NCBI RefSeq assembly: GCF_902652985.1
Contig: NC_047023.1
Span: 19,158,001-19,222,000 of the forward strand
Direction: 5' to 3'
DNA from: Pecten maximus
Taxonomy: Eukaryota
Length of the DNA: 64,000 nucleotides
The notes below the pieces were generated by a model. The model did not search any database and was not told where the DNA came from. It saw only the letters and a list, made by a program, of their open reading frames with translations. The stretch's first letter is position 1; the number at the start of each line of letters is the position of its first letter. Shown here in pieces: positions 1-64,000 of the stretch. Made by a program: the position numbers and the translations under genes.

Positions 1-419
1 TTGTACCACAAATTTTGTCTGTTTATAAAATCAAAAGCTTTCTTGTAATCAATAAAACAGCAATATAGTCTTTTCCTATTTTTTAAAATTTTACTTATTA
101 AGGTTTGTAAAACAAAAATGGCGTCTACAGTAGATAAGTTTTTCTTAAAGCCAAACTGAGCGTCACTTAATTTAGAATAATCACTATCAAATTTCATTAG
201 GCGCTCATTTAAAATTGATGTAAAAATTTTACCTAAACAACTAACTAGTGTGATGCCCCTGTAATTATTGGTATCATTTTTATCACCTTTCTTGAAGATA
301 GGTATAATATTGCCTAATGACCATGATGAAGGATAAAAACCAGATTTAAAGATATTATTGAACAATTGGACTAAGCAAGGCAAAAGTACCTCTTTTCCTT
401 TAATAAAATACTCATTTAA
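1..419 (-). mobile_element. Non-LTR retrotransposon reverse-transcriptase fragment (RTE-X/CR1-like), 5'-truncated, runs off the window edge
   Basis: Manual minus-strand translation is open: LNEYFIKGKEVLLPCLVQLFNNIFKSGFYPSSWSLGNIIPIFKKGDKNDTNNYRGITLVSCLGKIFTSILNERL...SDAQFGFKKNLSTVDAIFVLQTLI...LYCCFIDYKKAFDFINRQNLWY. These are canonical LINE RT motifs (PIxKKG, NYRxI, QxGF, FIDxxKAFD). Clade assignment is tentative. Confidence 0.93.
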
Positions 420-1267
420 CCAACTGAGTGACCACCAGGTAAATTCCATGTAAAAGTGGTCAGTCAATTGTAATCGGTGGCCTTGTAATCAATCATTTCA
501 GCAAAATAATAATGATAAGTACTCAACCTCCTTATAGACATTGGAAAAACATTTCATTTTTTTTTATAATCTTATAAATATAATAATGTTATAAGTAATG
601 AAAAAAGTAATCAAATTATAAACATATTTATTTTACCTATTATTTTTAAGATCTAGTCGATGCAGACATTTGGTCTAGCATGACTGTAACTATAATTTTT
701 GTCACTTGGATTTGACCCATACTCTAATACACACAGCTTGGTGACACTTATCAAAACGACAGGTAAACTCACAAGTTTTTGTTTGGATTTTAAAAACCTT
801 TATAATATTATCTCGAAAGTCTTATTATAAAATTATATAAACTTGCAAACCAGTATTTTTATTTCTCAATAATAATCAATAATTTAAACCGGGAAACTTA
901 TATATACACTTATTATGGGTGTATCTCTGAACGCCAACATTTTGAATTTACCTGTAGGGCAGTTTGTTTTGATAGTGATTATAGTCTTTTTCCTAAAAGG
1001 AGTCTCAATGCCAACATGTAAATTTACCTGTAAAAGTTACCTGTTGATACTTACATGGAGGTTAAATTAAGGATTTATAACCAAACATAATGCATTTATA
1101 TGTATATCTAAAATATTCATTTTATCTAATATCTAATTTAAAAATGGCAATACATTATTATATGTGTGAAAATTATTGTATGTCCGGTTTTTATTATTTT
1201 TTTAAAGGACATTTTTAATGCATAAACACATAAGATCCATTCCAACAGATATGATTTACATGCACTT

Positions 1268-1279
1268 ATCATTACATCG

Positions 1280-1312
<33 letters not shown>

Positions 1313-1334
1313 GATCATCATCATCATCATCATC
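1268..1334. repeat. (TCA)n microsatellite
   Basis: About 20 tca units with a few interruptions. Confidence 0.95.
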
Positions 1335-1369
1335 TTTTTAAAATATTTTGATTTATTTTCCATAGGTAT

Positions 1370-2400
1370 ACAAGTGATAATGCCCTGACGCTGGGTAACT
1401 CATAATCGACCGTTTACATAACCAGAATTTATAGATCTGCTTCCAGAAACATTTGAAAAACTCTGAAGTAAATCCATCCGACCCGAGGCTCTTATTATTT
1501 TTCTTGTTTTTAAGTGTTTCAGCTGCCTCATTTAGAGTTATCTTACCTTATAAACAAGTTGCCTTTTCTTCATTTAATTCAGGAATATCATAATTTTCCA
1601 GAAAATCTTCCGAGTTAACCTCACTAATATCACTATCAACCCCATATAATTGTTCGTATGAAGATTTAACCTCATCTAAAATAGCCCCTTGTTCTGTTAT
1701 TATTTCCCCATTATCTCGCTGTAACTTTAGAATTACTTTTGACATAAAGTTCCTATTTTCTAGACTGTAAAAACAATTTGTTAGTTTTTTCACCGTCCTC
1801 AAATCATAATGCTTTTGCTCTTATTATACTTCCCTTAATTCTATTTACTTAAATATTCTCTTATTTTTTCTTACCCAATTTTCCCTAATCTCCATTATTC
1901 TGACTTTCCATCTGCTGCATTTCATCTCTGAGATTGTTTTCACTTAACCTGCTTTGTTTTTTTTTAAAGATGTGTACGAAATTGTTTTTCCTCTAATTTC
2001 AATAGTTGATTGTCTTTAACTAATTGTAAATATCTGTCTGGAATATTATATATTGGGCTTTTATTTCTTTAAGGGTATTATTTATAATATCAAGATAATT
2101 TTGGTCATGTAACAGTGAACTAGTAAATTTCCACAAACCTCTACCTTTTTTAAACTAATTAAATTTCAATGTAATTTCTTGGAAGGAATGGTCAGATCTG
2201 TAACCGGAATATATGCCTGAATCAACAATACTTGGTAATAAGCTTACAGATACTAAAATAATAGAGTATTACCTTACAGATTCTAAAAAAAATTTAGCCT
2301 GGCTTTTTCTTGGTCTACTCTTCTGTTATGTATTTCTTGAAATATCAGGATGTTGCTCTCTGAAGACATCAACTAAATTAAAATTATCCGAGTTTGTATT
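1370..2400 (-). mobile_element. Degenerate L1/Tx1-like LINE ORF2 fragment (end of APE endonuclease plus linker into RT)
   Basis: Ordered minus-strand motifs broken by stops and frameshifts: LVDVFREQHP, ARLNFF, GYRSDHS, KGRGLWKF, FYSLENRNF..I..L....GEIITEQGAILDE...YEQLY (ORF 1548-1802), NNKSLGSDGFTSEFFKCFW. Confidence 0.85.
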
Positions 2401-3619
2401 ACTCAGAAAAAGAAGGATTTTGACCGGTACCGGAGTAATACTTATAGTAAACAGGGTCTTCGAGTAATCAGAGTTCAGGTTAATAAAGTTTGACTGTAAG
2501 TGATTATAAAAATCTTCAAACGTTATAAATAGGTTTTGCTCTTGCATTTTTTATTTATTTCATTACTATTTAAAAAAACAAAAAAACAAAAAAAAAAGGT
2601 TTTTGCCGTAGGTGCTCCAGCATATCGCCCTAAAACTTGCTATATTGCCTTTGCTGAGAGGTACATGTACATGTATATTCATTTTTAACTTTCTCTATAT
2701 ACATTTATATTTCAGATATTTAAACTTTAATGCATGCATGTATGTTGTAAGAAAATACAATTCTGTATGCCGTATGGAACACAGGTAAATCTTAGGTGAC
2801 TGTACAGGTAAAAAAGACAACTTATATGAAGCCGTATATAATTGCCTTCCCATTGTTTCCTGAAACAACACCTACCTATTGTTAAAAAAAATGTTGGCGT
2901 TCAGAGAACACCCCCTTATTAGGTACATACGATAAAAATTAGATAGGGGACTGATTATATATAATTACATGAGTGTTTAGGGGAGGGGTAAGCCATGCCT
3001 GACTAGTGCAGTACCTGTACAGGTAAACCCTTAATTAAGCTTAATGCCCTTTGGCCATGCCCAGAACAGCTGGACTCCTTGTGCCAGATTCCTCAGCTGT
3101 GTTTTCACACCTTTCAACAAAATAATAGTCAAAATCCCATTTTGTGTGATTTACCTGGTCTGGAAAGACTATATACCTGACGGTATACAAACTATAACAT
3201 TTATGTTGCATGTACAATATATGTTTCAATGAAGGCAGAATCAATATTGCTTGATGTTGATCGATTTAATTTTAATTTCAAAACTAGTATATTTCATGCT
3301 TCCTTATTTATAATTAATCTTAATTTAGTGTAAATGCATGGATGTAATGGATGGAATTAATGGTGGAAATAATGTAATATGATACCTGTATTTTGTCAGT
3401 TTTTGTGTATATTCTATTTACCAATACGTGACATGTATTATACTTATATACATGTAATAAACATATCTGAAATAAAAGTAAAATGTACACACCGTCATGA
3501 ACACACACAATATACATGGACTAGTCCCTGTATATATATTTATGAAATTTTGTTTAAATGAAACATTTATATGTTCAAGAGATTATGCATTGTATATCAA
3601 GTACTTTGTATATATTGAC

Positions 3620-54036: not shown

Positions 54037-54239
54037 GTTTGGTTCATTTTTTTTAATGTCCTATTAACAGCCAGGGTCATTTAAGGACGTGCCAGGTTTT
54101 GGAGGTGGAGGAAAGCTGGAGTACCCGGAGAAAAACCACTGACCTATGGTCAGTACCAGGCAACTGCCCCACGTGGGTTTCGACCTCGCTACTGATAAAG
54201 TGTCAGGACATCTTAACCACTCGGCCACTGCAGCCCCAT
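54037..54239 (-). mobile_element. SINE family B with TSD
   Basis: Reverse complement of the family B consensus; taaaaattg duplicated at 54028-54036 and 54240-54248. Confidence 0.9.
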
Positions 54240-56098: not shown

Positions 56099-56316
56099 TT
56101 GTTTGTTTGTTTTGTTTAATGTCCTATTAACAGCCAGGGTCATTTAAGGACATGCCAGGTTTGGAGGTGGACGAAAGCCTGAGTACCCGGAGAAAAACCA
56201 CCGGCCTACGGTCAGTACCTGGCAACTGCCCCACGTAGGTTTCCAGCCCACAACCAAGAGGTGAAGGGCTAGTGATAAATTTTCGGGACACCTTAACCAC
56301 TTGGCCACCGCAGCCC
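56099..56316 (-). mobile_element. SINE family B with TSD
   Basis: Reverse complement of family B; catggtaaRccat duplicated at 56086-56098 and 56317-56329 with one mismatch. Confidence 0.9.
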
Positions 56317-58485: not shown

Positions 58486-58857
58486 ATAGATAAAACATAG
58501 TGCCGATTTTGGAGAATATGTCTTGATAACCCCGTATGGAGCCCCTATTCATCTTGTTAGATTCACTAAGGCCTATGACAGGTAACGCTTGCTGGCTGGT
58601 GAAAGACATATGTGTGGGGCATTGGTCAGTTAATATAACTGACCTGCTCACAGACCGTAACGAAATTCTGACACTTCACTGACTGCAAGGGTGACAATAC
58701 CCCGATAAATAAACAATTAATTAAAACTAATTAAGCTGAGGACGCGTGGTGATGGTTTTGTAGCAGGTCAGTCATGGTTGATTGAACGCTTGTAAATGGC
58801 TTCGTATACTGCCTTTGATGTCAAGCGCATAAACGACCTCTACTTGACAGTATATCT

Positions 58858-59317
58858 GGCCTCAGACCACAATTAATTTCCCTCTATGTTATACCAAAGA
58901 AAAATAAAAATAAAAATATTTCAAAACATTGCAAAAAATCTAGTTTTCATATATGTTGTAGAACTGTTCAATCTGAATCTGCAGTGAGCTGGAAAGTACC
59001 TCATGACCGGCATTTAAGAAAGATATTTTTATTTAAATGCCACCACCCCTCTATATTATGGGAAAATCCGGAAAATTACAAAATATCACTACTCAAACCT
59101 TATAACTCCCTGTGTCCTTCCTCACAAACAAACATGCAAATGGTGTCAAAACAAAATTCTCCCACTAGAATAGATATTGCACTACAAATATATGTTAAAA
59201 TTATGAACATATCTGTAATAGCTAAGTCAGGAAAAAATATTTAGTAACATACCTGAAATTTACTTATGTACTACATTCGTGTACAACGACCCGGAAGTGT
59301 AACTGTGGTCTGAGGCC
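58858..59317 (+). repeat. Left long terminal direct repeat (460 bp) with its own TIRs
   Basis: Starts ggcctcagaccacaatta and ends taactgtggtctgaggcc (14-bp perfect, 17/18 inverted match). Confidence 0.97.
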
Positions 59318-60033
59318 TGTATATATGTATTTTTTAGAGATACAATTTTCTGGTTATATCACCACATTTGGCATACAATAACACATGTTATTGCAAATTA
59401 TTGTGAAATTTACTTCATAAATGAAAAAGTTATATCATTTTCAGTTACCCTACCCCCATCCTCTGTAAAACTCTACTCTGCCAATGAGACTTCTGAGAGA
59501 CCCAATATGTAAATGGCTAATTGGGCCATCAATATTCAAGTAATATATCAACATCATATATCAAATTAAAGCTTATTCAATACTTTTCTGAAATTTATAT
59601 GTTGTTTTTCAATTTTCACAAAAATGAACTTTATAAGGAATTTTTAATAATCCATGTAAAAAAATACACTTTTCAACACAATTTTTTTCAGTAAAAATGA
59701 AACAGTTTTTTTTTCAAAAATCACAGCCTGTCTAACTTTATACCACTGTATACAGGAAGTTTCCCCCTATAAAATGAGTGTAATTGAAACTTTATAGCCC
59801 AATTAATTAATTAGTAAACACATGACAAACACACCCAGGTAGGCAGGTGCCCTCTCTTCATTGGTCAGCACCAGGGGGATTTGGGTATGAGATATCCCCT
59901 TCCTGTGGGCTTGTAATCCTTATTAAGTGGTGTATATATTTAGACCATATGTGTTTTATGTAAGTTCAGGTAAAATAAAGGGTTTTGGATATATAGGGGT
60001 CAATTTTAGAGGGATATTTGGCCTGACAGCACC

Positions 60034-62058
60034 ATGAAAGGGAGGAAGAAAAGACTAAAATCTGCTTTCCAGTATGGTAACACACCACATAATAAGGGTA
60101 AAACAACTGCAGGACATGGGGTAAGTAAGGTTTTAACTAAAAACGAATCAGGCACCTGGAAACGATTGAGTCCCAATGTCTTTTCTTTAGTTACAGTAAC
60201 GCGCCCTGGTAGCAACTTTCCCAGCACTTCTGACACCGAAGGTAACCCTGGTAATGTGAAACTCCTTAGGCCCAGAAAAACCAAAGCGACTGATCTAGAG
60301 GCTTTAGACCTACATGAAAACATGAATAAAAAGCCTAGATTACAAACTCGTATCAGAAATCAGGGTAATCGATTAATAAATACAGAGAAAATTGGAGACC
60401 TCATGCAAATTATCTCCTCACACAGGTGTGACAACCCAGATGTTGATATTTACAATGAGATCAAAATAGGAGTAACATGTAAATTTCAAGTCTCATGTAA
60501 AACATGTGGTTGGGTGTCTGATACACATAAGATGTACAATGAAGTTCAATCCCCAAAAAGGGGACCAAACCCTGCAGTACCAAATCTGACAATGCACGCT
60601 GGCCTCCAAGAAACACCTATGGGGCCAGCAGGTGCACGGCGTTTGTTTAATTCAATGAACTTGGTTCCCCCCTGCCGTAGTGGTATGCAGAGAAATGCTA
60701 ATATGGTGGGAGAGAAAATAATATCACTAAATAAAGAGGATATGGCTAATAAAGCAAAAGAGGTAAGGGAGATATGCGAGTTGAGGGGAGACCCCAACAT
60801 GGTTAACGTACAAGTTGACGGAAGATATAATAGGTCAACAATAACCTTCCGTAACAAGCCTGGTACAAGTGCTGTACAATTAGCACTAATAGCGCGTGAG
60901 GACATTACAGACAAAAATTATATCTTGGGAATAGCCGTCCAATCACAGATATGCTGGAAGGGTAAATGGTTACGGCTCAAAGGGTTTGATGCTAAATGTC
61001 CTGGTGGCCACATTGACTGTAGTGCTACAATAGGGGAGGGGACACCGCTATCCGAGTTCGAAGCTGCTAAGCTTGTGGGTGAGCAATTGTACCAACAGGA
61101 TCTTATTGTACGGTACGCAACATCTGATGGAGACGCGAGATCTGTCGCAGGTCTAGATGCGGCATATAAAAACTTTATACCCATGTGGAAAGTCCAACGT
61201 CTAGCTGATCCCACCCATTTAGGACAAGCTCAATTTAGAAAATGTATACGAGCACATTTCAGCTCAGACATGTTCCCCGGAATGAGCACTAGAGAGGGAA
61301 AAACTGAATCACAAAAAGTTCTGAGCAGGGACATAAAAGCTCGATGTAGTTTGATTTGTAAAGAGCTCACAAAAGATTGTACCGGGGAAACCAAAATTAT
61401 GCGTGAAAAACTACCCCATGTGCTAGATGCTACCCTCAGGTGCTACAGTGGGGATTGTTCCCGGTGCAAAAGATACTCCTATGTGTGCAATGGTGGAGTT
61501 GGTAGTGGTACTTGGTGGAACAGGTCCATATTCCTGTCTAAACATAAACTATTTAGCTTGAACCTAGATGAAAATGACAAACAGCTATTGCTCGAGATAC
61601 TGAAAATGAAATTAACAGATGAATGTATCACAGGAATGTCTCTTGGAGCAAATACCCAAAGATGCGAGGCTTTTTTCAGGCTGCTTAACAGCCGCTTACC
61701 AAAAAATGTGCTATATAGCAAGAATATGAATGCACGATTCAATGGAGCTGTCCACACAGCAAATAATGGGGTGGGAAATTCCCTCATGAAAAAAATGGAG
61801 TGCCTCGGTGCAGCAGTAGCACCTGAAGTGAGGCGCTCTCTGCGACAAATGCAGTCAGAGCAAAATTACCACCAAGAGTACCAAAAAACCCCAGCTTTTA
61901 AGAAAAGGACTCTAGAACTGAAAGCAGAAGCTATTCAGAGGCACATTAAAAATAAGGGAGCTAGATCTGATTATAAAAAGGGACAGCTTGACACATATCC
62001 TGACCTCAGCACCAGTAGACTGAGCTCCAACAATGATGAACACAACTATCACAAATAG
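60034..62058 (+). CDS. DDD/E transposase, Kolobok/Mutator-like fold, 674 aa
   Basis: Uninterrupted non-repetitive ORF. Basic NLS-like N-terminus, Zn-ligand-like HRC...CKTC, candidate catalytic D262 (VQVDGRY), D365 (TSDGD) and E545 (NTQRCE), with DPTH (392-395) in the C/DxxH position. Catalytic assignments are by motif inference. Confidence 0.9.
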   Translation: MKGRKKRLKSAFQYGNTPHNKGKTTAGHGVSKVLTKNESGTWKRLSPNVFSLVTVTRPGSNFPSTSDTEGNPGNVKLLRPRKTKATDLEALDLHENMNKKPRLQTRIRNQGNRLINTEKIGDLMQIISSHRCDNPDVDIYNEIKIGVTCKFQVSCKTCGWVSDTHKMYNEVQSPKRGPNPAVPNLTMHAGLQETPMGPAGARRLFNSMNLVPPCRSGMQRNANMVGEKIISLNKEDMANKAKEVREICELRGDPNMVNVQVDGRYNRSTITFRNKPGTSAVQLALIAREDITDKNYILGIAVQSQICWKGKWLRLKGFDAKCPGGHIDCSATIGEGTPLSEFEAAKLVGEQLYQQDLIVRYATSDGDARSVAGLDAAYKNFIPMWKVQRLADPTHLGQAQFRKCIRAHFSSDMFPGMSTREGKTESQKVLSRDIKARCSLICKELTKDCTGETKIMREKLPHVLDATLRCYSGDCSRCKRYSYVCNGGVGSGTWWNRSIFLSKHKLFSLNLDENDKQLLLEILKMKLTDECITGMSLGANTQRCEAFFRLLNSRLPKNVLYSKNMNARFNGAVHTANNGVGNSLMKKMECLGAAVAPEVRRSLRQMQSEQNYHQEYQKTPAFKKRTLELKAEAIQRHIKNKGARSDYKKGQLDTYPDLSTSRLSSNNDEHNYHK

Positions 62059-62107
62059 TTATATATAAATATATATGTGTGTACATAAAATGAAATCATC
62101 AAAAACA

Positions 62108-62626
62108 TTAAAAAAAACCAAAATAAAACAAAAACAAAACAAAAACCAATAGAAATAACCATGATTGAGATGTATGAGATGAGCCGAGCTTGAGCCGTGC
62201 TCTGTGCAAAATGTACATAAAATGTTGATGCATATATTTCAGATAATGTACCTGTATATATTCTAATAAACAATCTGGATATTCCCCATGTCCTGTGCAA
62301 TTATTACAGTTTTTACAATGAATTCTGTTGTTGTTAATAACATGTGGCTCCAAACTGATATGGTCAACAGTTGTGCATAAATTATTATGACACAGGTGTG
62401 ATGCATCAAAGTGTGCAGGTAATTCTAAAACTTCCTTATCCAGCATAACACAGAAACGGTGTGCGGTAACCGTTTTCCAGACACCTGTGTCCGGGTGCCG
62501 GTATCTTACAATGCCATATTTTTTGTTGTTAGACAGTGGTCCCATCCATACCCTGCACCTGCTGTTCGCAGAAATCACAGATTTCTGGGTTACCATTTCC
62601 CTATATTTCACAAGAAAATTTTCCAT
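62108..62626 (-). CDS. His-Me finger (His-Cys box, I-PpoI-like) endonuclease; conserved domain is aa 1-~120 and the C-terminal tail may be spliced out
   Basis: CRVWMG...YG...AHR...DASHLCHNNLCTTVDHISLEPHVINNNRIHC...C.GH...PDCL. H77, C79, C84, H89, E93, N98, R101 and C104 keep the same gapless spacing as I-PpoI H98, C100, C105, H110, E114, N119, R122 and C125 (I-PpoI numbering from memory). Confidence 0.9.
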   Translation of the reverse strand: MENFLVKYREMVTQKSVISANSRCRVWMGPLSNNKKYGIVRYRHPDTGVWKTVTAHRFCVMLDKEVLELPAHFDASHLCHNNLCTTVDHISLEPHVINNNRIHCKNCNNCTGHGEYPDCLLEYIQVHYLKYMHQHFMYILHRARLKLGSSHTSQSWLFLLVFVLFLFYFGFF

Positions 62627-62927
62627 TTTCCTGTATCTAATTAAATTTTAGATGTTCATGAAAGTGAAAGTACGTATACTGAAGTAAACATGTGCTTTGC
62701 TGACAACCCGGCTCAATATATAAGACTTTATCAAATTTTAACATGAAATTTTGCTAAAATCATAGAAAAAGTGATGTAATAAGACAAATAAAATATAAAT
62801 TCATTCATAATTTACACTGACACCTAGTACAAACCTTCAACTTCAATATCCCAGCCTGTCAAATGTCTACTTCAAATGTGCCGACTACAGCGGAAGTTTT
62901 AGACGGGGTATAACTCTAGCCTATGCA

Positions 62928-63387
62928 GGCCTCAGACCACAATTAATTTCCCTCTATGTTATACCAAAGAAAAATAAAAATAAAAATATTTCAAAACATT
63001 GCAAAAAATCTAGTTTTCATATATGTTGTAGAACTGTTCAATCTGAATCTGCAGTGAGCTGGAAAGTACCTCATGACCGGCATTTAAGAAAGATATTTTT
63101 ATTTAAATGCCACCACCCCTCTATATTATGGGAAAATCCGGAAAATTACAAAATATCACTACTCAAACCTTATAACTCCCTGTGTCCTTCCTCACAAACA
63201 AACATGCAAATGGTGTCAAAACAAAATTCTCCCACTAGAATAGATATTGCACTACAAATATATGTTAAAATTATGAACATATCTGCAATAGCTAAGTCAG
63301 GAAAAAATATTTAGTAACATACCTGAAATTTACTTATGTACTACATTCGTGTACAACGACCCGGAAGTGTAACTGTGGTCTGAGGCC
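62928..63387 (+). repeat. Right long terminal direct repeat (460 bp) with its own TIRs
   Basis: Identical to 58858-59317 by eye except T59216 versus C63286. Confidence 0.97.
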
Positions 63388-64000
63388 ATCTCGGACAGAA
63401 AAAGTGAAAACAACACTGGCAATGTTATCAACGGAGTATCAAATTTGACAGATTACTTATTGAAATGTTATCTACATTTAAACATTGGCTGATCTTTAGA
63501 TAATTAGCACAAGGAAATAAATTCACAATAACGACCATACAGACCGAAGGCCTGGTTGCCGGTAGGTAACGTCGTTTCAATCACCGTAGCATCACCATAC
63601 TTCGTGTCAATTAACAGAGACTTATTTTGGCAGAAACTTTCCCAATTCACATTTTGAAAGACAGAAACATGTCCACAAATACTCACTTTCTTCAGAGACA
63701 TATATCTCTGCTTTCTTAAACTAAATACTGTCATGTTAAAACTTTGAATTTGATTGTGTTCAACCATGCATGCATCTGCAAAATGCTCACTTCATCTGTG
63801 GTATTCCCTTTTTCTCCCATCTGTGCAATACAGAGAGAATCTAGTCTCGTCCTTGGGAACATCTCATGTCCCCATGGACACGAACCGAACCTATTCGAGC
63901 TGTATGTCGATGCATCCAATCAAGACGCACTTGCATCTATAAGGTGGCCTAACATTAGGACAGTTGTCTCGGCATGCAAGTGATTCCTGGCAGTTTATTA

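What the first reader, a model, noticed from the sequence alone, without database searches (positions are those of the whole stretch)
62252..62626. Transposon-borne I-PpoI-like His-Me finger nuclease with a complete catalytic and zinc-ligand set
Seen: the SHLCHN-x2-C-x4-H-x3-E-x4-N-x2-R-x2-C motif plus a C-terminal C..GH...PDC cluster. Established: His-Cys box nucleases are typical of group I intron homing endonucleases in protist and fungal rDNA, not of cut-and-paste transposons. Inference: the putative general base (H77) and metal ligand (N98) are retained, so it may be an active ~125-aa nuclease. It could nick or cut target or empty sites, or stimulate LTDR-LTDR recombination that would yield solo LTDRs, circles or tandem arrays. 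It is also a compact nuclease candidate.
Basis: partly seen in the sequence, partly recalled or inferred. Interest (0 to 1): 0.8.

Follow-up and report, generated by a model that had tools for sequence, protein, structure and literature searches.

The report
Known KolobokP transposon nuclease, rediscovered
[quoted passage not shown] It is the accessory gene of KolobokP-1_PeMa, a scallop DNA transposon family published in 2022 whose supplementary data list this exact copy, so the finding is correct but not new.

Summary
The minus-strand ORF from 62626 carries the full SHLCHN…C…H…E…N…R…C motif. It passes Pfam zf-His_Me_endon (33.5 bits, cut-off 27). A profile of it finds I-PpoI in the PDB (E 2.7e-6). 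It folds confidently (pLDDT 90.9) onto I-PpoI (Z 8.9 over 112 residues).

It lies in a 4,530-bp element (58858-63387) with these parts:
- two 460-bp direct repeats (LTDRs), each with its own GG…CC inverted ends;
- a 4-bp target duplication (ATCT);
- a convergent 674-aa DDE transposase.

This is KolobokP (Kojima & Bao 2022, Mob DNA 13:24). Their supplement lists this very copy as KolobokP-1_PeMa, at LR736846.1:19216858-19221387 in Pecten maximus. A 2026 review says it is still untested.

Added here:
- five intact copies, each with a perfect 4-bp duplication;
- between-family dN/dS of 0.17 for the nuclease;
- 18 invariant residues, including both catalytic residues and all eight zinc ligands.

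The 125-aa end is not supported. There is no stop codon or splice at 62252, and the frame runs on to 62108.

Side notes: a perfectly conserved 25-nt block between the two genes, further uncatalogued KolobokP families, and a histone-type stem-loop in a foreign relative.

The parts
58854..58857 (.). Left target-site duplication, ATCT
   Evidence: The same 4 bases lie at 63388-63391. The four other genomic copies have their own perfect 4-bp duplications: AGAT, ACAT, ATAA and ATGT.
58858..59317 (+). Left long terminal direct repeat (LTDR), 460 bp, with its own terminal inverted repeats (GG...CC ends)
   Evidence: 99.8% identical to 62928-63387. The ends are inverted copies: 14 perfect bases, or 18 with one mismatch. 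Listed as KolobokP-1_PeMa-LTDR at LR736846.1:19216858-19217317.
59318..62927 (+). Internal region (INT), 3,610 bp
   Evidence: Listed as KolobokP-1_PeMa-I 1-3609 at LR736846.1:19217318-19220927, 99.8% identical to the consensus.
60034..62058 (+). DDE transposase ORF, 674 aa, intact
   Evidence: Pfam PF20700 at 1.3e-57, matching the full model length 1-357/357. Invariant in 7 relatives: D262, D365/D367, D392-x-x-H395, E545, the zinc-finger set C307/C322/H326/C329 and the set C470/C475/C478/C485. Intact in all 5 copies. This copy has two private changes, at positions 272 and 511, both at variable positions.
62252..62626 (-). Conserved part of the His-Me finger (I-PpoI-like, His-Cys box) nuclease ORF
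   Evidence: Identical at the nucleotide level in all 5 genomic copies. Omega is 0.17 against the nearest foreign relative.
62108..62251 (-). Open-frame tail of the nuclease ORF. Low-complexity, variable in length between copies, and probably not functional coding sequence.
   Evidence: The tail is 47 to 66 residues long depending on the copy, because of indels at 62117-62118. Relative L041 stops before it. No splice was seen at 62252.
62178..62202 (.). 25-nt block in the spacer between the 3' ends of the two genes. It is two tandem 11-mers, TGAGCCGWGCT on the + strand.
   Evidence: Identical in the window element and in two foreign relatives that are only 77-80% identical overall. It ties for the longest 3-way-identical run with the TIR junction. 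In this genome it occurs only in the 5 copies and one relic.
62928..63387 (+). Right LTDR, 460 bp
   Evidence: Listed at LR736846.1:19220928-19221387, 100% identical to the consensus.
63388..63391 (.). Right target-site duplication, ATCT

Best explanation
The ORF is the accessory nuclease gene of one full-length copy of KolobokP-1_PeMa. This is a published family of the KolobokP lineage of Kolobok DNA transposons, in the great scallop genome. The element is LTDR-INT-LTDR. INT encodes a DDE transposase on one strand and, converging on it, a small His-Cys box / His-Me finger nuclease related to the group I intron homing endonuclease I-PpoI.

Shown here: the identity of the element, recent transposition with 4-bp duplications, the I-PpoI-like fold, a complete catalytic and zinc-ligand set, and purifying selection.

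Inferred, not shown: the protein is an active, metal-dependent, sequence-tolerant DNA endonuclease. My preferred role, at about 40% odds, is that it cuts KolobokP's own DNA (an LTDR, or abutted TIRs on an LTDR-INT circle). Repair from the sister chromatid or from a circle would then create or restore LTDR-INT units. That would explain the solo LTDRs and the (LTDR-INT)n arrays seen in this genome. This is Kojima & Bao's 'induced unequal crossover' model.
For: Identity of the element:
- The 460-bp LTDRs have their own GG...CC inverted ends.
- All 5 of 5 copies have a perfect 4-bp duplication, and pairwise differences are 0.2-0.4%.
- The transposase carries D, D, DxxH, E and both zinc fingers.
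- The nuclease lies downstream on the complementary strand.
- The paper's Table S1 gives KolobokP-1_PeMa as 4,529 bp with a 460-bp LTDR and a 4-bp TSD. Its copy list contains LR736846.1:19216858-19221387, which equals window 58858-63387 given the window position reported.

Nuclease:
- Pfam hit above the gathering score.
- Profile hit to I-PpoI with residue-for-residue motif alignment.
- Model pLDDT 90.9; I-PpoI Z 8.9 over 112 of 125 residues.
- 18 invariant residues across 11 relatives of 34-61% identity. They include H77, N98, C24/C79/C84/H89 and C104/C110/H113/C119.
- Omega is 0.17-0.18 against L040 at dS about 1.4.
- The same convergent nuclease-transposase pairing is found in 5 of 5 foreign relatives examined.

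Consistent with the recombination role: solo LTDRs and multimers of related families in this genome.
Against: - No biochemical or genetic test of any KolobokP nuclease exists. A 2026 review states that the model awaits confirmation.
- No target site is known.
- The protein lacks a counterpart to the C-terminal roughly 20 residues of I-PpoI. The structural alignment ends at I-PpoI residue 141 of 162. From my own knowledge, not a tool result here, that tail makes the domain-swapped dimer in I-PpoI.
- Within the family there are no substitutions in the ORF, so within-family dN/dS is uninformative. About 2.9 variable sites were expected and 0 were seen, Poisson p about 0.06.
- Transcription of the nuclease is not shown. 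Only contigs of runs guessed to be RNA cover it. The one certain RNA-seq run covers only parts of the transposase.
- In this family the ORF lacks the usual stop after the domain.
Confidence: 0.9

Rival explanations
1. The nuclease is a transposition accessory rather than a recombination trigger. It might cut the second strand, or linearise or resolve a circular LTDR-INT or TIR-TIR junction intermediate. The DDE transposase and the nuclease would then complete excision or integration together, as TnsA and TnsB divide the work in Tn7.
For: The gene is kept next to the transposase in every relative examined. Abutted TIRs would form a 2 x 14-bp perfect palindrome, which suits a symmetric I-PpoI-like enzyme (TIR sequence). 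The paper reports excision footprints reminiscent of copy-out-paste-in circles. Two 100%-identical solo LTDRs here carry 5 bases of the INT end (ATGCA) on one side.
Against: Other Kolobok lineages transpose without a His-Me nuclease. The paper found some KolobokP families that appear to lack it. No circle junction was observed here.
Confidence: 0.25
2. The protein is a sequence-specific DNA-binding factor that no longer cleaves, like the SMAD MH1 and NFI domains, which share the His-Me fold. It might regulate the element's transcription or recruit host factors.
For: SMAD MH1 (Z about 5) and NFI (Z about 4.5) appear among the structural matches. The 25-nt block between the genes is two tandem 11-mers, not a palindrome, which would suit tandem binding.
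Against: The catalytic His and Asn, and the S/E/R residues around them, are invariant across relatives of 34-61% identity. I-PpoI scores about 3-4 Z units above MH1 and NFI.
Confidence: 0.07
3. The ORF is a decaying passenger with no current function.
For: In this family the normal stop after the domain is missing, and the frame runs into low-complexity sequence of variable length. Expression is unproven.
Against: Omega is about 0.17 and dS about 1.4 against the nearest relative. The ORF is intact and identical in all five copies. All ligands are invariant. The lineage has been retained across 7 animal phyla.
Confidence: 0.03

Closest known systems
KolobokP-1_PeMa, KolobokP lineage of the Kolobok superfamily (Kojima & Bao 2022, Mob DNA 13:24, PMC9587614)
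   Same: Everything that defines it matches: the LTDR-INT-LTDR layout, the 460-bp LTDRs with their own TIRs and GG...CC ends, the 4-bp TSD, a total length of 4,530 bp against the 4,529-bp consensus, the DDE transposase with DxxH and two zinc fingers, and the His-Me nuclease convergent and downstream. This copy is in the paper's own copy list.
   Different: Nothing of substance. This copy differs from the other four genomic copies at a handful of sites, including two private transposase substitutions at variable positions.
I-PpoI, His-Cys box homing endonuclease of the Physarum rDNA group I intron (PDB 1A73/1A74/1CZ0)
   Same: It shares the SHLCHN catalytic strand, the His general base, the Asn metal ligand, E114 and R122 equivalents, two zinc sites with identical spacing in the core, and the overall fold (Z 8.9 over 112 residues).
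   Different: Identity is only about 20%. The conserved domain here is about 120 aa against 163 aa, with no counterpart to I-PpoI's C-terminal tail beyond residue about 141. It lives in a DNA transposon, not an rDNA intron. The target site is unknown, and dimerisation was not supported or refuted.
Mutator-like elements (MULEs), as suggested by the name of Pfam PF20700
   Same: The transposase matches PF20700 'Mutator-like transposase' at 1.3e-57. Kolobok, MuDR, P and hAT share the C/DxxH signature.
   Different: The TSD is 4 bp, not the 8-11 bp I recall as typical of MULEs (my own knowledge, no tool result). The ends are long direct repeats with short TIRs, not long TIRs. Repbase and the paper place the family in Kolobok. 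The Pfam name should not be read as a superfamily assignment.
Bacterial composite transposons and IS26 translocatable units
   Same: There are two self-contained, TIR-bearing repeats around a cargo. LTDRs are mobile or removable on their own. There is a possible one-repeat-plus-cargo circle.
   Different: The transposase is in the internal region, not in the flanking repeats. The element is eukaryotic. It has an added homing-type nuclease.

Membership tests
KolobokP | [quoted passage not shown] | tested here: met
   460-bp repeats at 58858-59317 and 62928-63387, 99.8% identical.
KolobokP | Each LTDR has its own short TIRs (11-18 bp), with termini 5'-RR...YY-3' | tested here: met
   Ends are GGCCTCAGACCACA and its inverted copy, 14 perfect bases or 18 with one mismatch, and GG...CC termini.
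KolobokP | Target-site duplication of 3-5 bp | tested here: met
   Perfect 4-bp TSDs in 5 of 5 copies: ATCT, AGAT, ACAT, ATAA, ATGT.
KolobokP | DDD/E transposase with a C/DxxH signature, a zinc finger between DxxH and E, and a CCHC finger after the first D | tested here: met
   D262, D365/D367, D392-P-T-H395, E545, C307/C322/H326/C329 and C470/C475/C478/C485 are invariant in 7 relatives of 37-84% identity. Pfam PF20700 is matched over its full length. Which Asp residues are catalytic is inferred from position, not tested.
KolobokP | Small His-Me finger nuclease encoded downstream of the transposase on the complementary strand | tested here: met
   ORF 62626-62108 (-) converges on 60034-62058 (+). 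The same layout occurs in 5 of 5 foreign relatives.
KolobokP | Catalogued copy of a named family | tested here: met
   Supplement file 4 lists LR736846.1:19216858-19221387 as LTDR / I 1-3609 / LTDR of KolobokP-1_PeMa. The window is C9:19158001-19222000.
[quoted passage not shown] | Family profile match above the curated threshold | tested here: met
   33.5 bits against 27. A profile of relatives finds I-PpoI at E 2.7e-6.
[quoted passage not shown] | Catalytic His (I-PpoI H98) at the end of the first strand and metal-ligand Asn (N119) in the helix | tested here: met
   H77 and N98 align to H98 and N119. Both are invariant in 11 relatives. H77 ends strand 73-77 and N98 lies in helix 95-106.
[quoted passage not shown] | Eight Cys/His ligands forming two zinc sites | tested here: met
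   C24, C79, C84, H89 and C104, C110, H113, C119 are all invariant. C79/C84/H89/C104 align directly to C100/C105/H110/C125. Assigning C24, C110, H113 and C119 to I-PpoI C41, C132, H134 and C138 is by order and invariance only.
[quoted passage not shown] | Beta-beta-alpha-metal fold resembling I-PpoI | tested here: met
   pLDDT 90.9. Foldseek's top 4 hits are I-PpoI with probability 0.93-0.99, although E is only about 0.01. VIA-align gives Z 8.9, rmsd 3.8 A, 112 residues aligned.
[quoted passage not shown] | Homodimer held by a C-terminal tail | tested here: inconclusive
   There is no counterpart to I-PpoI residues beyond about 141. The homodimer prediction returned no verdict.
[quoted passage not shown] | Encoded in a nuclear rDNA group I intron, with homing into an intron-less allele | tested here: not met
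   The gene lies in a DNA transposon with TSDs at five unrelated loci. It is a relative of the homing endonucleases, not a homing endonuclease in the genetic sense.
[quoted passage not shown] | Metal-dependent site-specific DNA cleavage | not testable with these tools
   No published assay exists for any KolobokP nuclease.
Mutator-like elements (MULE) | TSD of about 8-11 bp and long TIRs | tested here: not met
   The TSD is 4 bp, and the ends are 460-bp direct repeats with 14-18-bp TIRs. The MULE criteria are from my own knowledge.

The most novel reading that the evidence does not exclude
The 25-nt block at 62178-62202 is two tandem 11-mers lying between the convergent 3' ends of the nuclease and transposase genes. 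It is as conserved as the TIRs and is not mentioned in the KolobokP paper. The novel reading is that it is the nuclease's own recognition or cleavage site. The enzyme would then break the element inside INT, and sister-chromatid or circle-templated repair would drive unit gain and loss. A milder version is that it is a shared 3'-end or regulatory signal specific to this clade.
Probability: 0.1. Interest if true: 0.55.

Novelty: already known. Interest (0 to 1): 0.15.

Why it matters
As a discovery it does not matter: the lineage, the family, this copy and the proposed mechanism were all published in 2022. It still marks a real open problem. No KolobokP nuclease has been assayed. Its target is unknown. 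It would be the first homing-type endonuclease shown to serve a eukaryotic cut-and-paste transposon. KolobokP-1_PeMa is a good test object, with five nearly identical intact copies and a conserved nuclease domain of about 120 aa, smaller than I-PpoI. The conserved 25-nt block and the TIR-TIR palindrome give two concrete substrates to try first.

Tried and rejected
- Single-sequence phmmer against the PDB found no I-PpoI hit, only two chance hits at E about 0.09. The profile search was needed.
- Foldseek alone gave no hit at E <= 0.001, although its top four hits were I-PpoI. VIA-align settled it.
- The homodimer prediction (2 x 125 aa) scored 0.01 against a mark of 0.32, which is 'no verdict'. 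It is not evidence for or against dimerisation.
I used between-family pairs instead. Only the pair with L040 has unsaturated dS; the other pairs give omega well below 1 but with unreliable dS.
- Splice at 62252 (CAG|GT): there is no joint in any run, and contigs X1#7, X3#15 and X4#21 pass through it. I rejected it as unsupported. These are contigs and cannot exclude a rare isoform.
- Expression: the runs that cover the nuclease are only guessed to be RNA. The certain RNA-seq run (X9) has two small contigs, both in the transposase. No claim is made.
- MULE classification from the Pfam name: rejected on the TSD and the end structure.
- The 25-nt block as a histone-type stem-loop or a stable hairpin: no Rfam hit and weak folding (z -1.5 and -2.6). 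Rejected.
- The 25-nt block as a dispersed host target: it occurs only inside the element copies and one relic. Rejected.
- The private substitution at transposase position 272 (Phe here, Cys in the sister copies) as a zinc-finger lesion: the position varies among relatives (C/S/G). Rejected.
- The large representative-protein search was not run, because Pfam, the word search and the literature left nothing open.

Full report
**What is at the coordinates**

The minus-strand ORF begins with ATG at 62626. It reads S76-H77-L78-C79-H80-N81, C84, H89, E93, N98, R101, C104, then C110, G112-H113, P117-D118-C119.

Pfam zf-His_Me_endon (PF05551) matches at 33.5 bits, above its gathering score of 27. 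A single-sequence search of the PDB found nothing. A profile built from the ORF and ten relatives (alignment A1) finds I-PpoI chains at E 2.7e-6 to 3e-4. It aligns the catalytic strand and helix residue for residue at a constant offset of 21: H77=H98, C79=C100, C84=C105, H89=H110, E93=E114, N98=N119, R101=R122, C104=C125.

AlphaFold2 on A1 gives pLDDT 90.9 and pTM 0.81. It shows strand 73-77, strand 90-94 and helix 95-106, the beta-beta-alpha-metal core. Foldseek ranks four I-PpoI entries first, though weakly (E about 0.01, probability 0.93-0.99). VIA-align gives I-PpoI Z 8.9, rmsd 3.8 A over 112 residues. That is well above I-HmuI (6.0), SMAD MH1 (about 5) and NFI (about 4.5), which all share the fold.

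**The element around it**

The ORF converges on a 674-aa ORF at 60034-62058 that matches Pfam PF20700 over the full model (1.3e-57).

Both ORFs lie between two 460-bp direct repeats, 58858-59317 and 62928-63387, which are 99.8% identical. Each repeat has its own inverted ends with GG...CC termini. The bases ATCT flank the whole element on both sides.

The window's genome holds five copies whose nuclease is 100% identical. I fetched the other four. Findings from comparing them:
- All five copies are 4,528-4,530 bp long.
- They differ pairwise at 8-18 sites.
- Each sits in unrelated flanks with its own perfect 4-bp duplication: ATCT, AGAT, ACAT, ATAA, ATGT.
- All five transposase ORFs are intact.

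This is a young transposon family that inserts with 4-bp duplications.

**It is already published**

[quoted passage not shown] The paper defines KolobokP by:
- LTDRs of about 450 or about 660 bp that carry 11-18-bp TIRs with RR...YY ends;
- 3-5-bp TSDs;
- a DDD/E transposase;
- solo LTDRs and (LTDR-INT)n multimers.

It proposes that the nuclease cuts LTDRs or abutted TIRs, and so drives unequal crossover or circle integration.

Its Table S1 lists Pecten maximus xPecMax1.1 KolobokP-1_PeMa as 4,529 bp with a 460-bp LTDR and a 4-bp TSD. Its copy table lists three adjacent segments on LR736846.1:
- 19216858-19217317 (LTDR);
- 19217318-19220927 (I, 1-3609);
- 19220928-19221387 (LTDR).

The window is C9:19158001-19222000, so this is window 58858-63387 to the base. 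The other four copies I found are in the same list. A September 2026 review says the model 'awaits experimental confirmation'.

**Membership checks made here**

In an alignment of seven transposases of 37-84% identity, the following are invariant:
- D262;
- D365/D367;
- the D392-x-x-H395 signature;
- E545;
- the CCHC finger after the first D (C307/C322/H326/C329);
- the finger between DxxH and E (C470/C475/C478/C485).

This matches the paper's description of KolobokP transposases. The Pfam name 'Mutator' is only a label. The 4-bp TSD and the end structure are not MULE-like.

**Is the nuclease under selection?**

The ORF is identical in all five copies. About 2.9 variable sites were expected from the element-wide rate and none were seen, which is not significant.

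Between families:
- Against the nearest foreign relative (L040, 62% aa identity), dN is 0.23-0.25, dS about 1.4 and omega 0.17-0.18.
- More distant pairs have saturated dS but omega well below 1.
- The transposase gives omega 0.09-0.11.

Eighteen residues are invariant across eleven relatives of 34-61% identity. They include both catalytic residues and all eight zinc ligands. All five foreign relatives I looked up have the same convergent nuclease-transposase layout.

The nuclease evolves about three times faster in dN than its transposase (0.23-0.29 against 0.08-0.10). Three-way nucleotide identity drops from 0.7-0.8 in the transposase to 0.36-0.55 in the nuclease.

**Where does the protein end?**

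There is no stop codon there. The frame runs to 62108 in this copy (172 aa). In sister copies it runs to 188 or 191 aa, because of indels at 62117-62118 in a low-complexity tract.

Most relatives stop 2-6 residues after the last Cys. One, L040, shares the read-through. Contigs from three runs cross 62252 without a joint. I therefore treat residues 1 to about 122 as the functional domain, and the tail as probably tolerated junk. The true C-terminus is open.

**Expression**

Only Logan contigs were available. Runs guessed to be RNA cover the nuclease. The one certain RNA-seq run covers only two short stretches of the transposase. I make no claim about expression.

**Dimer**

The homodimer prediction gave no verdict. 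The structural alignment stops at I-PpoI residue 141 of 162. The tail that holds the I-PpoI dimer together (my own knowledge) therefore has no counterpart here.

**Mechanism**

Shown: the element's identity, its recent mobility, the fold, the ligand set and selection.

Inferred: catalysis. My odds for the role:
- about 40% for the published induced-recombination role (cutting the LTDR or a TIR junction);
- about 25% for a direct role in transposition or circle processing;
- about 7% for binding without cleavage;
- about 3% for a dead passenger;
- the rest unknown.

This genome shows the products the model is meant to explain. There are solo LTDRs of this family. There are arrays of sister families with and without LTDRs between units.

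**Things noticed beyond the paper**

1. A 25-nt block at 62178-62202 consists of two tandem 11-mers. It is identical in this element and in two foreign relatives that are only 77-80% identical overall. It ties with the INT/LTDR-TIR junction and one upstream block as the longest three-way-identical run. About 0.01 such runs are expected at the overall three-way identity of 0.617. It is absent from other clades. In this genome it occurs only inside the copies and one relic. It is not a strong hairpin or a known RNA motif.
2. This genome holds KolobokP families beyond the two listed for it: a third nuclease-bearing family and an abundant non-autonomous family of about 3 kb.
3. One foreign relative has a bona fide histone 3' stem-loop just after its transposase stop.

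**Verdict**

Interest is low as a finding. The untested biochemistry remains a worthwhile experiment.

Noticed in passing
window 62178-62202 (also L040:909-933, L041:980-1004, L042:786-810): A 25-nt block between the 3' ends of the nuclease and transposase genes, made of two tandem 11-mers (TGAGCCGWGCT on the + strand). It is identical in three KolobokP-1-clade elements that are only 77-80% identical overall, so it is as conserved as the TIR junction. It is absent from other clades. In this genome it is found only in the 5 copies plus one relic at C18:4660911. The KolobokP paper does not mention it. Its function is unknown.
   Followed up: partly
window 62108-62251 (-): In this family the nuclease frame lacks the usual stop after the last Cys. 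It reads on into T-rich low-complexity sequence. The tail length differs between copies (172, 188 or 191 aa in total) because of indels at 62117-62118.
   Followed up: yes
L035 (C844:1-10000), L036 (C13:20431000-20440999), L037 (C18:38000-47999), L039 (C14:6753000-6762999): A third KolobokP-like family. Its nuclease is 49% identical to the window's, it has a 667-aa transposase ORF, and it shares no DNA similarity with KolobokP-1_PeMa or KolobokP-2_PeMa. It is not among the two families the paper lists for this species. On C13 and C18 it forms arrays with an LTDR between units (period about 4.1 kb). On C844 it forms an array of at least 5 units at period 3,667 bp, with INTs abutted and no LTDR. 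On C14 there is a 3,175-bp deletion derivative.
   Followed up: partly
L051-L053 (C5:47505832-47509217, C8:30268172-30271553, C3:45842024-45845405): An abundant non-autonomous relative, with 591 first-look LTDR candidates. Its 460-bp LTDRs are 88% identical to KolobokP-1_PeMa's and have identical 14-bp TIRs. They occur in pairs 2,522 bp apart, giving a monomer of about 2.98 kb. Its INT is unrelated to KolobokP-1_PeMa's except for the terminal bases (TGTAT... and ...TCTATGCA). One copy has TSD ACAA. Two copies continue into further INTs, so they are multimers.
   Followed up: partly
L054 (C3:33921377-33922236), L055 (C7:24451188-24452047): Two solo LTDRs are 99.6-100% identical to this family's LTDR. 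Each carries the last 5 bases of INT (ATGCA) on one side and has no clean TSD. L054 sits in a satellite-like repeat, where the expected left duplicate (GTGT) is replaced by ATGCA. This fits the LTDR-excision or LTDR-mobilisation footprints described in the paper.
   Followed up: partly
L043:4059-4104 (-) and L043:1185-1230 (-): Rfam Histone3 3'UTR stem-loop (RF00032), 41.5 bits against a gathering score of 34, E 5e-9. It lies 44 nt downstream of the stop of the transposase of a foreign KolobokP relative (ENA ERZ23498740 scaffold_7715). This suggests a replication-dependent-histone-type mRNA 3' end, and perhaps S-phase expression, in that family. It is not present in the window's element or in six other relatives scanned, and the KolobokP paper does not mention it.
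   Followed up: partly
window 62252-62626 compared with 60034-62058: The nuclease evolves about three times faster than the transposase of the same element. dN is 0.23-0.29 against 0.08-0.10 with respect to L040 and L041. Three-way nucleotide identity is 0.36-0.55 against 0.7-0.8. The predicted DNA-contact hairpin (residues about 37-57) is nearly unchanged between the window protein and P0001.
   Followed up: partly
window 60311: Contigs from three runs, including the one certain RNA-seq run, match the element up to 60311 and then continue into unrelated letters that differ between runs. There is no canonical splice signal at that place. The bases 60300-60310 resemble the TIR with 2 mismatches. 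Unexplained; it may be an assembly-graph branch.
   Followed up: partly
window 54039-54192 and 56102-56254: Two copies of a dispersed repeat of about 155 bp, 86-92% identical and 2,062 bp apart, upstream of the element. Not examined.
   Followed up: no
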